DNA from: Octopus bimaculoides
Taxonomy: Eukaryota
DNA: 45,043 bases
Assembly: GCF_001194135.2 (NCBI RefSeq)
Contig: NC_068986.1
Location: 7,672,372-7,717,414, forward strand
Direction of reading: 5' to 3'
Position 1 is the first letter of the stretch; the number at the start of each line of letters is the position of its first letter. Below the pieces are notes generated by a model that saw nothing but the letters and a program-made list of their open reading frames with translations, was not told where the DNA came from and did no database searches. This document shows positions 1,335 through 36,623 of the stretch, piece by piece. The position numbers were made by a program, and so were the translations under genes.

Positions 1335-1619
1335 ATAACATCTTGAATTTCAGTCTGGTCAGATTAAAAACATTCCTTGTTGTTCGATATTTTATGTAAA
1401 TACCCTCTTCAGAGTTTTGAAAAGCATGTGACAACACAACAGCAAAGTATATTGCAAAGAGTGTGGGTGAATCAAGGTCTCCTTGCTTTGCTCCATTTTC
1501 CACAGCACAAGGCATTGCTACACAAGAGCATGCCTTTATCGTGCTACCAAAATTAACTCTAGCTTTCATATATTGATGCAAAGCCCTGACCATGCTTACA
1601 ATTTTTTTGTGGGCAACAT
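1335..1619 (-). mobile_element. RTE-clade (BovB-like) LINE reverse transcriptase fragment, degraded
   Basis: Minus-strand peptide CPQKIVSMVRALHQYMKARVNFGS...AVENGAKQGDLDSPTLFAIYFAVVLSHAFQNSEEGIYIKYRTTRNVFNLTRLK matches the RTE RT region around the GVKQG..LAPTLF motif, including the RTE-typical GIYIRYR..G.LFNL.RL segment. Confidence 0.85.
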
Positions 1620-1641
1620 ACATACATACGTACATAAATAC

Positions 1642-1930
1642 GGAGCCTTGAATCATTATTAGAAACTGGCTCCCTCCTCAGTGGAAGATTTCTAATAATG
1701 AAAAAATTGAAGAGACATACAAATAAAAGTACCCTGTTGTTGATGTTGAAATTCCAAGGAAGGAGCCTTGGATCTAGGTTAGAAACCGGCTCTTTCTCTA
1801 TTGGCAAGGAATCTTGAAATAAACAGAATAATGACATGCATACAAAAAATACCCCGCTATTGATGTTGAAATTCCAATGAAGGCGCTTTGAATCTAGGAT
1901 AGAAACCGGTTCTTTAGTTGGTAGCGGAAA
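1642..1930. repeat. 120-bp-period tandem repeat, about 2.4 copies
   Basis: GG(A/C)GC(C/T)TTG(A/G)ATC starts at 1642, 1762 and 1882; TGATGTTGAAATTCCAA at 1741 and 1861. Confidence 0.9.
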
Positions 1931-23340: not shown

Positions 23341-24375
23341 TCCACTCTGTGCTTTGCTCTTCGCATCATCTTAGAGCAAAGCGCAGAGTGGATATTAATT
23401 TTATTGATTTCGAAAAAGCATTCGATAGTGTAGACAGGGAAGGCTTATGGAGAATTATGCAGCACTACGGCATACCAGGCAAGTATATATCTATAATAAG
23501 AGCAACTTACCAACAAATGTCATACCGAGTCTTGCATGGAAACGGAGCTACGGATAAATTCGAAGTAAAAACAGGAGTTCGACAGGGCTGTATACTTTCT
23601 CCCTTTTTATTTCTACTAGTTATAGATTGGATTATGAAGGAAACAACGGTTGAAAGCCAAACAGGCATTGAATGGGCGGATGCAGAAGCTCTAGAAGATC
23701 TCAACTTTGCAGATGATATCGCGCTACTTTCACAAACACATAGCCAAATGCAAAATAAAACGTCAAAATTAGAAGCAATAGCTGCCAAACTAGGGTTGAA
23801 AGTCAACCGCGACAAATCAAAAATTATGCGCGTTTATGAAGAAAACAGTGAACGTATTAAACTAGAAATCGGTGAACTAGAGGACGTAGCCGAATTTACG
23901 TACTTGGGTAGTAAGATAACGTTCTCAGGCGGCACCGACGAAGATACTAAGATGATAATAAGTAAGGCAAGGACCGCTTTCCACCTGTTAAAAAAACTAT
24001 GGAGCGCAAATGTAATTTCAATAAAGAACAAAATAAGAATTTTTAACACTAACGTAAAAGCGGTGTTATTGTATGGGGCTGAGACATGGCGAACAACAAT
24101 TAAGTCAAATAAGCAAATACAATCATTCATCAACAGGTGCTTGCGTAGTATACTTAAAATCAGATGGCCTGAACACATAAGAAATATGGAGATATGGCAA
24201 AGAACCAATCAAGTTTCGATTAGGGAGCAAATATTTAAGAGAAAGTGGAAGTGGATTGGTAGCACAATTAGAATGCACACACCAAATGCAGCGAAAAGTG
24301 CTTTACAGTGGAATCCGGATGGGCCTAAGAACTCATGGCGTAGATCAACACAAAAGGAACTAGAGAAAGGGGGAC
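23341..24375 (+). mobile_element. 5'-truncated RTE-clade LINE (SR2-like) reverse transcriptase; open frame of about 330 codons running into a gap
   Basis: LRIILEQSAEW, INFIDFEKAFDSV, GVRQGCILSPFLF, LEDLNFADDIALL, LGLKVNRDKSK, FTYLGSKI, VKAVLLYGAETW, FINRCLRSILKIRW, WKWIGSTIR; no stop from about 23394 to the gap at 24376. Confidence 0.97.
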
Positions 24376-24836
24376 NNNNNNNNNNNNNNNNNNNNNNNNN
24401 NNNNNNNNNNNNNNNNNNNNNNNNNNNNNNNNNNNNNNNNNNNNNNNNNNNNNNNNNNNNNNNNNNNNNNNNNNNNNNNNNNNNNNNNNNNNNNNNNNNN
24501 NNNNNNNNNNNNNNNNNNNNNNNNNNNNNNNNNNNNNNNNNNNNNNNNNNNNNNNNNNNNNNNNNNNNNNNNNNNNNNNNNNNNNNNNNNNNNNNNNNNN
24601 NNNNNNNNNNNNNNNNNNNNNNNNNNNNNNNNNNNNNNNNNNNNNNNNNNNNNNNNNNNNNNNNNNNNNNNNNNNNNNNNNNNNNNNNNNNNNNNNNNNN
24701 NNNNNNNNNNNNNNNNNNNNNNNNNNNNNNNNNNNNNNNNNNNNNNNNNNNNNNNNNNNNNNNNNNNNNNNNNNNNNNNNNNNNNNNNNNNNNNNNNNNN
24801 NNNNNNNNNNNNNNNNNNNNNNNNNNNNNNNNNNNN

Positions 24837-31690: not shown

Positions 31691-33591
31691 CTTTCAAAGC
31701 ATACATGCTTTTGCGCAAGTATTACAATCTGCCATTTATAGAGATATGTTGTCATAGTTTCTCTTTAACTAAATACAATATCTGTTTTTGTTAGGAAAGA
31801 GGGTAACAGGAATAAATGTATTTCAGATAGCATGGACACCAAGCAACAGCAAGACACCGTTACATTTTAATGTATCAGCAATGATACGTTGACCTAGAAT
31901 TATTGATTTGGAATTTATTTAGAATATTCTACACTCTAAATTGTCCAAATGTATTGATGTCTTATAATTTATCATGAAGCTATATCTACTGTGAATTGTA
32001 TTCAACTGATTTTAATTGTAGGTTCTCTTATTCGTAAACCTACAAACTTTTCCTTCTGTTCGGTTGCATACAGTCCTTATTATCTCTTGGTGGAGACTAT
32101 ATAAGGTTTTATGTAGTGCTGCTTCTGAATAGGCGTTTTATGGATGTGTGCACCTTTACTGGAAATATGTGAACAATTTAAAACTGTTAGCAGTACTTAG
32201 TAGCTTGAATTATTAATTATTTTTCACATAATTCCCTCCGAGCGTTTTCTGAAATATTAAGTTTCGTAATGGAAACCTTAGTTATAGCTGCCTGTGTTAG
32301 AAGAAGTACTAAGTTCAGTCATTGAAGAAACATTTTGCACGCCATCATTCTCACCAAAACTTACAGTTATGATAGATTTTTAGAGTTTCCAACAAACATA
32401 TACTGTGGAGTCAACTGCTTCAAACTTCAAGGCCTGACTCCATAACATTGTACATTCTTTAAAATAGAACAGGAAATAGCATCTGAGATCTCAATGGATT
32501 ACCGCATTTTCATGGATTCATTTAGTTAATGTTTCTACCTATAGAGGAACTGTAATTTGTGCTCGGTAGAAGGACTGAAACTTCTTAATTGTAGATCCGA
32601 TTAATCAAGATGAAGTCTTAATCAAGATGAAGTGTCCACACTTATTTATTTAATAAATCTTTCTCAAACTTTCCACATAAATAACCTACATAAACAAAGT
32701 ATTTATGTCCAACAAACTTTAATACCTGTTGGATTTTCTTATGAATTATCCTCCGCTCGTCATTGAATTATATCTTGTGTAACATATCTATTACATTTTT
32801 CTTTAACTAATCTTCGATCTAATCCTTAACTATTGCATCTAATTTAATCCATTGCAACTGTAGTACACCTAATATCATTTAATGTTGATCACAGACGACG
32901 TGGGAAATAGTTTAATATTTACACTTGTTACAACGATCGTCTGCTTCCGTTTTTTACTTCGTTTCTTTCAAATTTCTTCTCTTATTAACTGCTCTCTATA
33001 CTGTATTTTGATTACCCCTCCCCTTCCATTGATTCTAGTAGTGAATATATTATAGCAAATTTCCCTTTCTATTTATATTCACTGCACCAGCGTACTTTAA
33101 AAATTGATGACACCCTGACCTTTGAGGTGCTGCGCATTCTAAATCAAAGAAGATGGTTTCATATGTCACTTATCTACAACCTCCATCTACTGAATTATTT
33201 TGACGGAAAGAATACTTGATGTTGATAACTTTAATAGCATGCAACTCTGTTGAAAACTCTAGACAAAACTACCATAACAATTCTAAGGTCTGATGAGAAT
33301 GATGGAGGGTAAGCTATTTAATTAATTAATTAATTAATTAATTAATTGATACCAATTTTCCTCNNNNNNNNNNNNNNNNNNNNNNNNNNNNNNNNNNNNN
33401 NNNNNNNNNNNNNNNNNNNNNNNNNNNNNNNNNNNNNNNNNNNNNNNNNNNNNNNNNNNNNNNNNNNNNNNNNNNNNNNNNNNNNNNNNNNNNNNNNNNN
33501 NNNNNNNNNNNNNNNNNNNNNNNNNNNNNNNNNNNNNNNNNNNNNNNNNNNNNNNNNNNNNNNNNNNNNNNNNNNNNNNNNNNNNNNNNNN

Positions 33592-33627
<36 letters not shown>

Positions 33628-33631
33628 GCGT

Positions 33632-34910
33632 CCCGAAATGTACGCATGCAGTGGAAAATCTGTCCATCAAATGTTACATATTCCACTCTGAGTGTGCCAA
33701 CAAATCAGCATCATCAGCATAAAGTAATTCTCTAACAATTAATTTGGAGAAAAACCAAAGTAATGTTTACTCCCGTGCCTAGACAAACATTCTGAACCAA
33801 ACATTTTTGTGAATGCAACAAGGTTAGAAGTCGTTGAAACCTTTGTTTACCTAGGAAGCATACTATCAAGAGATGGTAGTTTGATGCAGAGATATGCTCT
33901 CAACCAGGGAAGGGAAGTGCTGCATTTGGAAAGTTCGAAAAGCGAGTATGGGCGGACAGAGGTATTGCCCTGCAGTCAAAAAATCAGTGTCTATAAAGCG
34001 TGTGTATTGTCTGCACCTCTTTATTCAAGTGACACATGGATCATTTACAAGTATCATATAAAGCTTCTGGAGAAATTTCATCAAAAGTGTTTCAGACGTA
34101 TCTTAAGAGTCAAATGGGAATGTTTCATACCAGATACAAAGGTTTTGCGCATGGAACGTTGCAGCTCAATTGAACAACATGTTATCTTGGCTGAAATGAG
34201 ATGGAATGGACATGTTATTAGAATGAAAGACGAGCGTTTGCCAAAGCATCTTTTTTTATGATGAGCTCACCTCTGGTAAGCGACCACAACATAAGCCGAG
34301 GAAAACGTATAAAGTCTGTTTCAAGGAAAATCTGAAGAAACTAGATATGAATAAAAGTGATTTGGAAAATGGTGTTCTAGATCGAAACAAGTGGAGAGGT
34401 GCTGTTAGGACAGGTTTCCAAGCCTGGGAGGAACAGATGATTCAGCACTCTTAAACTGAAAAGGGTCTGTCGCAAAGGAACAATTGGAACTGTAATCAAC
34501 AGAGAACATTGGATATGTATTATATGTGACCGTTCTCTGTTGTCAAAAGCAGGATACGTGAAACATATGAAGTCACATGAAAATCGTAATGCCTAGACAG
34601 GTAATGATCTTGGACACCAACCACCTCTTATGACTTGTATCATATGTCAAAAAACTCGTAAGACAATATCTGGACTTAAAAAACATACTAGTTCACAAAA
34701 ACATTCCTTCAGAATCAGATTCCAAAGGTCAAAGATATAGAAGAAACTTGAATAATATCTGTCACTTGTGTTTTAAACCCTGTCAGTCAGCAGCTGGTCT
34801 TAGAAGTCATCTGAGGGCTCATCAACGGAGTGATCGTACTGTGTGATGGGTTGTGGTGTGTGTTGATGGGAAGGCTATCATCTCTCAAGATGAAGCAATC
34901 GTCATATATA
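33632..34910 (+). mobile_element. 5'-truncated, 5'-inverted RTE (BovB-like) LINE with three C-terminal C2H2 fingers; decayed
   Basis: Plus strand from 33732: LTINLEKTKVM, VETFVYLGSILSRDG, KISVYKACVLSAPLYSSDTW, LEKFHQKCFRRIL, MRWNGHVIRMKDERLPKHLF, DRNKWRGAV. Minus strand 33742-33632: IVRELLYADDADLLAHSE..M*HLMDRFSTACVHFG. 3' end GATGAAGCAATCGTCA then (TA)n. Confidence 0.95.
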
Positions 34911-36623
34911 TATATATANNNNNNNNNNNNNNNNNNNNNNNNNNNNNNNNNNNNNNNNNNNNNNNNNNNNNNNNNNNNNNNNNNNNNNNNNNNNNNNNNN
35001 NNNNNNNNNNNNNNNNNNNNNNNNNNNNNNNNNNNNNNNNNNNNNNNNNNNNNNNNNNNNNNNNNNNNNNNNNNNNNNNNNNNNNNNNNNNNNNNNNNNN
35101 NNNNNNNNNNNNNNNNNNNNNNNNNNNNNNNNNNNNNNNNNNNNNNNNNNNNNNNNNGAGAGAGAGAGAGAGAGAGAGAGAGGAAGAGAAAGAAAGAGAT
35201 CGATCGATCGATAGATAAATAGAAAATAAAATTGACAAATATAACGGTCATTCATATACTTTCCTCTGCTTATATATAACAATCTTGACTTTAGCCTAAA
35301 TGTTATATGGCATACGCGTTCACGATATTCCTTTCAATCATTTTATATTTTCTATTATAATTTTGTACAAAATTCATTATCATAATTTTTTATAGTTCAA
35401 TGATACTTGGAATTCCTTCTGCTCGCTCATTGTTTAACAACTCTCTTCGTTTCACTAAGAGCTATGATATAATATGTTATCTATTTCAAAGCTGCAAATT
35501 TTATAGTTAACAAAAATTTATAGGTTCTTTTAGAATATATATCAATATCTGACATTTATAACTTTTTAATATTTCTAACCTTGAAGATCGTAAACATTAA
35601 ATATTTCCCTTCATTTTATTGGATGTATTCAAAAGATCTACGTTCCGCTTTTATTGCGGTTGTCAAGCAATTACCGTTTATTAGAAAATCGTAAATCGAA
35701 ATATATTGAGCCTTAATGGTGGAATATTTCATTCATTTGAAGCTGGCTTGAATGCACCATTGGAGATAATTCTGCAAAATTGTTGTTAATATTAGAAAGT
35801 AAATTGGTTGCTTCTCAAACAGATTCCTTCTTGGTGTGGCCATTGATAGAATAACATCAAAGCACACAAAATTCTAATCAGCATGTAGAACTATAACAAA
35901 AAAGAAATCCTACTAAACGAGAATAAATTCTGTAATATTATATATTATTACAGAATTTACTGGAAAATCCAATGAAAACTTAATAAAATATCAAATTAAA
36001 TTTGTCTGGTAGTATGCGATTTGACATATTTACTTTAATAAATGTTTTTTATGCACATGCGCACATATTCATACTCACACACATACACAGACACTCCCAC
36101 ACATGTAAACATATACACATACGCACAGATACGCACATATATTGGTAAATTATTAGCACCGTTCCGTTACATTACTCATGCATTCCATAGCAAAGGAAAA
36201 TTCGAGAAGTGGCTATCTCAGAATCAATTCTGAAATGGTTCACCAAAACTCCTTCGCTGAAACTATTTCATTTGTTTCTAGTTAGATATGAAGCCGAAGA
36301 TCTGGAACGATCTGGATCTTGTTTAGGCATTGTATTATTGTAGCATGTTTGGCTGTACTATGCAGAATTATACTAATAGCGTCCACAAAATGCTTATAGT
36401 TTCTCGGTATGGTATTCCCAGTAATGTTTACAGTTCATCAATGTGTGATTACGCAATTAAATGGCAGTCTAGGAAATATTGGTTTAGATAGCTATTAATT
36501 AATTAATGTGTATAAAAAATAATTCAGTTTGCGGTAATATTTAATACAATGGATATTAAAGCTTAACTGGAAATAACTATTCAGTTGAAATATTTTTGTG
36601 GTTCACTAATAATAAATTGTTTT

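What the first reader, a model, noticed from the sequence alone, without database searches (positions are those of the whole stretch)
33632..33760. Exact twin-priming-type 5' inversion in an RTE-clade LINE
Seen: the minus strand of 33742-33632 reads LIVRELLYADDADLLAHSEWNM*HLMDRFSTACVHFG, and the plus strand from 33732 reads LTINLEKTKVM. Re-inverting the first piece gives ...ACVHFG|LTINLEKTKVM with no apparent loss or gain, the contiguous RTE RT sequence after YADD. The inversion junction overlaps by up to 11 nt (CTAACAATTAA, 33732-33742), which reads as sensible RT on both strands. Established: this geometry (flank joined to point b, inverted segment, microhomology join to b+1) is the twin-priming product described for mammalian L1. 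Inference: a mollusc RTE element can do the same; I am not aware of this being well documented for RTE, but I cannot search.
Basis: partly seen in the sequence, partly recalled or inferred. Interest (0 to 1): 0.75.

Follow-up and report, generated by a model that had tools for sequence, protein, structure and literature searches.

The report
Inverted 5′ end in octopus LINE
A decayed, 5′-truncated copy of an RTE-like jumping gene in an octopus-type genome has its first ~116 bases flipped, as expected if reverse transcription started from both cut DNA ends ("twin priming"), a process documented almost only for mammalian L1; the assembly could not be checked with reads.

Summary
Minus strand 33738..33623 and plus strand from 33735 are adjacent pieces of one LINE reverse transcriptase. 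This was shown against protein homologues and against two uninverted octopus DNA copies (L002, L001). The join is not exact. The plus-strand reading needs a 1-nt frameshift. Five bases (ACAAT) occur in both arms. The junction microhomology is 4 nt (ACAA), or 8 of 10 if read loosely.

Both arms are equally diverged from the reference copies. The direct arm runs to a genuine 3′ end: a conserved hairpin, a GCAATCGTC box and an (AT)n tail. The outer end of the inverted arm abuts (TA)n, not LINE sequence.

Twin priming is the best explanation (about 0.75). It is unproven.

A survey of 22 truncated relatives in metagenome contigs found one more 5′-inverted copy. It has a 523-nt inverted arm, a 386-nt deletion and 2-nt microhomology, and it appears in five independently assembled contigs.

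This is a known mechanism in a clade where I found no report of it. Interest is modest.

The parts
33592..33624 (.). (TA)n microsatellite directly left of the inverted arm. Presumed target DNA or top-strand primer. The contig starts inside it, after gap 33364-33591.
   Evidence: (TA)n is its own reverse complement and is very common here: 19 runs of at least 8 units in 42 kb.
33623..33738 (-). Inverted 5' arm. It is the RT segment from ..(L)VRELLYADD.. to ..ACVHFG plus the first 8 nt of the LTI codons, equal to L002 16634-16748 read on the minus strand.
   Evidence: 101/110 identical to L002 and 88/110 to L001.
33623..33624 (.). 5'-junction microhomology AT, assignable either to (TA)n or to the element (rc of A7 T8 of CTCACAAT).
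   Evidence: alignment, read directly.
33735..33738 (.). Inversion-junction microhomology ACAA. It sits inside a looser 8/10 match (CTAACAATTA, 33732-33741) between the reverse complement of the a-region and the b+1 region.
   Evidence: Position 33734 (A) fits only the inverted arm. Position 33739 (T) fits only the direct arm.
33735..34903 (+). Direct 3' arm: RT from LTINLEK.. through the RT C-terminal region, three decayed C2H2 fingers and the 3' UTR to the element's end. It carries several frameshifts and stops.
   Evidence: 84-91% identical to L002 in 110-nt blocks.
33735..33739 (+). ACAAT, the direct-arm copy of the 5 nt that also lie inverted at 33623-33627. This is a small duplication at the inversion point.
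34516..34822 (+). Three degenerate C-terminal C2H2 zinc fingers (34516-34578, 34636-34704, 34760-34822).
34874..34896 (+). 3' UTR hairpin: GCT..TCATCT-CTCA-AGATGA..AGC.
   Evidence: 10 pairs, 2 with compensatory changes in 3 sequences. Further variants CGTCT/AGACG appear in L009-L011.
34895..34903 (+). Conserved terminal box GCAATCGTC. Relatives have GCAATCAWC, directly before the tail.
34904..34918 (+). (AT)n microsatellite tail, running into gap 34919-35157.
   Evidence: Relatives carry (ATGT)n at the same point.

Best explanation
This is one old retrotransposition event of an RTE-like LINE (endonuclease, RT and C2H2 fingers in one ORF) into a (TA)n microsatellite, resolved by twin priming.

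Inferred steps:
1. The nicked bottom strand primed on the (AU)n tail and copied the RNA from its 3' end up to position b+4.
2. The top strand, also ending in (TA)n after second-strand cleavage, annealed internally at the AU-rich ..ACAAUUAAU.. site through 2 nt (AT). It copied the RNA from b+8 back to position a, about 116 nt.
3. The two cDNA 3' ends (..TTGT and ..ACAA) paired through 4 nt and were joined.

What is shown:
- the two arms and their coordinates;
- the microhomologies;
- equal divergence of the arms;
- the intact 3' end.

What is inferred:
- the order of events;
- that (TA)n was the target;
- that the assembly is right.
For: - The arms are adjacent in the RT at protein level and at DNA level against two uninverted copies.
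- The inverted arm is an internal fragment with no 3' end of its own, so it cannot be a separate TPRT insertion.
- Its outer end meets (TA)n, not the next element bases.
- There is 4-nt microhomology at the inversion junction and 2-nt at the 5' junction. This is the pattern described for 5'-inverted L1 (PMC2912911).
- The arms are equally diverged.
- The direct arm ends with the family's conserved hairpin, terminal box and microsatellite tail.
- A second 5'-inverted copy exists in a related family. L022 3479-4001 equals L019 653..131, and L022 4000-4703 equals L019 1040 to the end, with 2-nt microhomology. It is present in five contigs from five samples. It was 1 of 22 truncated copies surveyed.
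Against:
- The contig is 1.3 kb, of a repeated family, with gaps on both sides.
- No target-site duplication is visible.
- (TA)n is so common here that a (TA)n flank alone says little, and being palindromic it hides its orientation.
- A simple inversion between ATTGT (33623-33627) and ACAAT (33735-33739) would give the identical sequence.
- In cell assays 5' inversions were nearly confined to human L1 in human cells (PMC4245944).
- This is a single locus.
Confidence: 0.75

Rival explanations
1. Post-insertion inversion. An ordinary 5'-truncated copy began at ..TTGTTAGAGAA.. next to (TA)n. Later its first ~110 bp were inverted by a replication template switch between the 5-nt inverted repeats ATTGT and ACAAT.
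For: The final sequence is exactly what such an inversion predicts, with no duplication needed. (TA)n tracts are fragile and prone to forming hairpins (general knowledge).
Against: The left breakpoint must fall within about 3 nt of the element's 5' end, which is roughly 5e-3 for a breakpoint anywhere in a 1.3-kb copy. That factor comes on top of the rarity of 100-bp inversions. The L022 copy has the same overall layout but with a 386-nt deletion, which a simple inversion does not produce.
Confidence: 0.08
2. Assembly artefact. The short contig is a chimera of reads from different copies of the family.
For: The contig is 1327 bp, bounded by gaps, and comes from a multi-copy family in a gap-rich draft. 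No reads could be laid on it. No ORF of the contig is in the protein collection, and the junction 27-mer is absent from JGI metagenome contigs.
Against: Two coordinated misjoins would be needed, one at (TA)n|b+8 and one at a|b+4. Each would rest on 2-5 nt of shared sequence, far below any assembler word size. The arms show the same divergence. The same kind of structure is reproduced in five independent assemblies for L022.
Confidence: 0.07
3. Two independent insertions of the same family in opposite orientation that happen to abut.
For: LINE-rich genome. Other LINE fragments lie in the window.
Against: The minus-strand piece lacks the 3' end that every TPRT copy keeps. The end points coincide within 8 nt in a roughly 3.5-kb element. 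The divergence is equal.
Confidence: 0.02

Closest known systems
Twin priming of mammalian L1 (Ostertag & Kazazian 2001, Genome Res 11:2059; as summarised in PMC2912911 and PMC4245944)
   Same: The layout is flank, inverted 5' arm, then direct 3' arm starting next to the inverted arm's far coordinate. There are short microhomologies at the 5' junction and at the inversion junction. There is a small duplication at the inversion point. That last feature of L1 is recalled from memory of the 2001 paper, which was not held.
   Different: The element is RTE-like (single ORF, 3' hairpin, microsatellite tail) rather than L1 with poly(A). The target and primer are (TA)n rather than a T-rich site. The inverted arm is only about 116 nt. 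A 10-20-bp target-site duplication, typical of L1 inversions (PMC4245944), cannot be seen here.
Single Nimb-2_DR 5' inversion recovered in chicken DT40 cells (PMC4245944)
   Same: A non-L1 LINE giving a 5'-inverted insert. It shows that the outcome is possible but rare outside L1.
   Different: It was an experimental de novo insert of a zebrafish element of another clade. Here the copy is an old genomic one.
RTE-2_OV of Octopus vulgaris (PMC9115989)
   Same: An octopus RTE-clade LINE with one ORF of 1109 aa carrying endonuclease, RT and C2H2 finger. This is the architecture of the full-length relatives found here (L009, 1165 aa).
   Different: No 5' inversions are discussed there.
L022-group copy found here (JGI metagenome contigs Ga0099801/05/06/08 and Ga0126339)
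   Same: Same RT group. It has an inverted 5' arm joined to a direct 3' arm with 2-nt microhomology, the arms are equally diverged (94.3% and 93.5% to L019), and the left flank is non-element.
   Different: The family has a (CAA)n tail. The inverted arm is 523 nt. 386 nt between the arms are missing. The host organism is unknown. The candidate target-site duplication is not significant.

Membership tests
Twin-priming product (5'-inverted LINE insertion) | An inverted 5' arm and a direct 3' arm that are contiguous, or nearly so, in the element's own coordinates | tested here: met
   Inverted arm = L002 16634-16748. Direct arm starts at L002 16744. The overlap is 5 nt. Protein continuity ..ACVHFG|LTI...
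Twin-priming product (5'-inverted LINE insertion) | The outer end of the inverted arm joins non-element (target) DNA | tested here: met
   (TA)n begins where the element would continue TAGTTTGG. Only 33 nt of flank are visible before the gap.
Twin-priming product (5'-inverted LINE insertion) | Microhomology at the inversion junction and at the 5' junction | tested here: met
   ACAA (4 nt) and AT (2 nt). Compare PMC2912911.
Twin-priming product (5'-inverted LINE insertion) | Both arms of the same age and subfamily | tested here: met
   92% against 87% to L002 (p 0.17). 80% against 77% to L001 (p 0.55).
Twin-priming product (5'-inverted LINE insertion) | The direct arm keeps the element's true 3' end and tail | tested here: met
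   Hairpin, GCAATCGTC and (AT)n, aligned with relatives.
Twin-priming product (5'-inverted LINE insertion) | One target-site duplication bracketing both arms | not testable with these tools
   Both flanks run into N gaps after (TA)n / (AT)n. Reads were unavailable.
Twin-priming product (5'-inverted LINE insertion) | The junction is real in the genome (read or independent-assembly support) | not testable with these tools
Exact ORF look-up and junction search were negative.
RTE-clade LINE | Single ORF with N-terminal AP-type endonuclease followed by RT | tested here: met
   L009 has a 1165-aa ORF with Exo_endo_phos at 26-248 and RVT_1 at 562-831. L004 agrees. This was shown for relatives, not for the truncated window copy.
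RTE-clade LINE | Very short 3' UTR ending in a microsatellite-like tail | tested here: met
   About 60-nt UTR plus (AT)n here. Relatives carry (ATGT)n or (CAA)n. RTE tails such as (CAA)n, (TA)n and (GTT)n are listed in PMC6007223.
RTE-clade LINE | Placement inside the RTE clade in an RT phylogeny with reference elements | not tested
The support is indirect: an octopus element with the same EN-RT-C2H2 architecture was placed in RTE by PMC9115989.

The most novel reading that the evidence does not exclude
RTE-group LINEs, which normally start reverse transcription only at their own 3' hairpin and tail, also perform twin priming at a measurable rate (about 1 in 20 truncated copies in the small survey). 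In families with an (AU)n tail, a (TA)n target may favour it. Because the repeat is self-complementary, both nicked strands end in the sequence the RT normally uses as primer, and either can pair with an internal AU-rich stretch of the RNA. This would show internal initiation without the 3' recognition signal, and second-strand cleavage before first-strand completion, in a clade other than L1.
Probability: 0.3. Interest if true: 0.5.

Novelty: new member of a known kind. Interest (0 to 1): 0.35.

Why it matters
Cell-culture work concluded that 5' inversions depend on both the LINE and the host. They were seen almost only with human L1 in human cells (PMC4245944). Four full-text searches pairing 'twin priming' with RTE, BovB, CR1 or invertebrate, plus one on plant non-LTR elements, found no report for RTE-clade elements.

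Genomic 5'-inverted RTE-like copies would have three consequences:
- They would show that the timing of second-strand cleavage and the ability to prime internally are not L1 peculiarities.
- They would give a sequence signature (arm lengths, microhomology, deletions or duplications) for comparing TPRT resolution across clades and hosts.
- They would warn annotators that short antisense LINE fragments next to truncated copies can belong to the same insertion.

With one unverified locus and one metagenomic example, this remains a lead, not a result.

Tried and rejected
This is the main hole in the analysis.
- Independent contigs through exact protein look-up. Seven ORF variants of the contig are not in the collection.
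- Junction 27-mer in JGI metagenome contigs: no match.
- Other copies inside the window: none by blastn.
- Rfam on 33000-35400: no match.
- RTE-2_OV sequence in the supplements of PMC9115989: not present.
- The original twin-priming paper (PMC311219) and Ichiyanagi 2007 (PMC1716264): not held.
- Target-site duplication for the second example. The best candidate, AGCTTTTAGTAATGG / AGCTGATAAAAATGG (11 of 15), is not significant (p 0.07-0.2).
- A mistaken first reading. I briefly read the blastn result as showing that L001 and L002 share the inversion. tblastn showed that both are uninverted, so they serve as references.
- Snap-back self-priming of the cDNA: rejected, because segment a..b is present once and inverted, not duplicated.
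- Dong/R4 clade: rejected, because relatives carry an AP-type endonuclease.

Full report
**What is there.**
- Region 33592-34918 is a single 1327-bp contig between two N gaps, 33364-33591 and 34919-35157.
- It starts in (TA)n and ends in (AT)n. Eight of the window's eleven gaps border (TA)n. Runs of at least 8 TA units occur 19 times in 42 kb.
- The plus strand from 33732 reads LTINLEKNQSNV. It becomes LTINLEKTKVM only after removing one A from a run, a 1-nt insertion relative to copy L002.
- The rest of the plus strand is a decayed RT C-terminal region with several frameshifts. It is followed by three degenerate C2H2 fingers.

**The two pieces are neighbours in the element.**
- A stitched protein found 100 homologues. 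The best named one is Octopus bimaculoides LOC106869505.
- In the alignment the consensus runs ..LVRELLYADDADFxAHTExDMQxIMDxFSxACxAFG|LTISLKKTKVMFTP.. without a break.
- Two octopus genomic copies were fetched: L002 (O. vulgaris OX597825) and L001 (O. bimaculoides CM046607).
- Both carry this region uninverted.
- The window's inverted arm matches L002 16739..16631 on the opposite strand (92.7%, E 1e-41). The direct arm matches L002 from 16746 onward (82%, 919 nt).
- This is far beyond chance.

**Exact anatomy.**
- Past the FG codons the minus strand continues GGGACGCACAAT and then (AT)n. The element reads GGACTCACAAT there, a 7 of 8 match in fixed register (chance about 5e-4).
- The inverted arm is therefore 33623-33738, equal to L002 16634-16748. 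Its last two bases (AT) are shared with the (TA)n flank.
- At the inner junction, base 33734 (A) fits only the inverted arm and base 33739 (T) fits only the direct arm.
- The strict microhomology is therefore ACAA (33735-33738), inside a looser 8 of 10 match.
- The direct arm starts at b+4. ACAAT therefore occurs in both arms, a 5-nt duplication.

**Same copy, same age.** Identity was measured in 110-nt blocks.

| Reference | Inverted arm | Direct arm | Fisher p |
|---|---|---|---|
| L002 | 92% | 84-91% (pooled 87%) | 0.17 |
| L001 | 80% | 77% (pooled) | 0.55 |

L001 and L002 compared with each other show the same mild excess in the YADD segment. There is no sign of two subfamilies.

**A genuine 3' end.**
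- Relatives L003, L004 and L006-L011 end with a short UTR. It holds a hairpin (CATCT/AGATG, CGTCT/AGACG or CTTCT/AGAAG, with compensatory changes), a box GCAATCAWC, and then (ATGT)n.
- The window copy has the same hairpin (34874-34896), then GCAATCGTC, then (AT)n from 34904.
- The direct arm is thus a normal 5'-truncated TPRT product. The (AT)n is its tail.

**What kind of LINE.**
- Full-length relative L009 has a single 1165-aa ORF with Exo_endo_phos, RVT_1 and C-terminal C2H2 fingers.
- A single ORF, a short UTR and microsatellite tails are the RTE pattern. PMC6007223 lists (CAA)n, (TA)n and (GTT)n tails.
- An O. vulgaris RTE-clade element with EN, RT and C2H2 in a 1109-aa ORF is published (PMC9115989).
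- I did not make a phylogeny, so clade membership is consistent but not proven.

**Mechanism.**
- Twin priming (described in PMC2912911 and PMC4245944) predicts every feature seen:
  - an internal fragment lacking its own 3' end, in antisense;
  - its far coordinate next to the direct arm's start;
  - its outer end on target DNA;
  - microhomologies at both joins.
- A further inference follows from the target. A (TA)n target is self-complementary, so the top-strand 3' end has the same sequence as the bottom-strand primer that normally pairs with the (AU)n tail. It can also pair with the internal ..ACAAUUAAU.. stretch.
- The two cDNA ends (..TTGT-3' and ..ACAA-3') are complementary.

**Rivals.**
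- A later inversion between ATTGT and ACAAT gives the identical sequence. It needs a breakpoint exactly at the element's 5' end.
- A misassembly needs two coordinated joins on 2-5 nt of shared sequence.
- Two independent insertions are excluded by the missing 3' end of the antisense piece and by the coordinate coincidence.

**A second case.**
- Scanning JGI metagenome contigs with the protein alignment returned 56 loci.
- Among 22 distinct 5'-truncated copies with a visible 5' junction, one has an antisense arm. The family ends in a CTTCG/CGAAG hairpin and a (CAA)n tail.
- Its structure:
  - L022 3479-4001 equals L019 653..131 (94.3%).
  - L022 4000-4703 equals L019 1040 to the end (93.5%).
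  - The join has 2-nt microhomology (GA).
  - L019 654-1039 is missing.
  - The left flank is non-element.
- The same structure is present in five contigs from five samples at 98.9-99.9% identity (L022, L023, L024, L026, L032). It is therefore not an assembly accident.
- Its candidate target-site duplication is not significant.

**Literature.**
- Searches pairing 'twin priming' with RTE, BovB, CR1, invertebrate or plant non-LTR elements returned only L1-centred work or bare citations.
- PMC4245944 found 5' inversions only with L1 in human cells, apart from one Nimb-2_DR insert. It concluded that they depend on the LINE and the host.

**Limits.**
- The gaps hide any target-site duplication.
- The organism is inferred only from best hits (octopus).
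- The survey is small.

**Verdict.** This is a real and non-random structure, best explained by twin priming (about 0.75) in an RTE-like LINE. It is a known mechanism in a clade where it is not documented, and of modest interest until a genome-wide census is done.

Noticed in passing
L022 3479-4703 (also L023, L024, L026, L032): A second 5'-inverted copy in a related (CAA)n-tailed family. It has a 523-nt antisense arm, a 386-nt internal deletion and a 2-nt junction microhomology. It is identical in structure in five metagenome contigs from five samples. The host organism is unknown.
   Followed up: yes
window 34874-34903; L003 1770-1803; L004 2930-2966; L006-L011 3' ends: A conserved 3' UTR hairpin with compensatory stem changes, followed by a GCAATCAWC box. 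The tail motif differs by family: (ATGT)n, (AT)n or (CAA)n. This looks like the RT recognition signal of this LINE group.
   Followed up: partly
window 23349-24375 (+): A long RT ORF of a different LINE family (..GVRQGCILSPFLF.., ..LNFADDIALLS..), about 27% identical to the family studied. It runs into gap 24376-24836, which is followed by (AT)n.
   Followed up: no
window 1342-1665 (-): A fragment of the same RT group covering only the part upstream of the YADD region (aa 52-133 of P0008), with no downstream RT next to it. It is a 3'-truncated piece, which is unusual for a LINE copy.
   Followed up: no
window, all gaps: Eight of eleven assembly gaps border (TA)n and one borders (CA)n. (TA)n runs of at least 8 units occur 19 times in 42 kb. 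Some may be LINE tails.
   Followed up: partly
L001 4001-23387: The NCBI gene model LOC106869505 (P0002) is assembled from a decayed LINE copy. It skips the YADD segment as an 'intron' and reaches a last exon 18 kb away. It is probably not a real gene.
   Followed up: partly
L048, L049/L050, L052, L058, L061: Several distinct copies join the endonuclease N-terminal part (aa 8-161) directly to the RT C-terminal part (aa 742-890). This looks like an internally deleted, presumably non-autonomous, subfamily that has itself multiplied.
   Followed up: no
window 33318-33346: A (TTAA)n/(TAAT)n run just before gap 33364-33591, on the contig to the left of the element.
   Followed up: no
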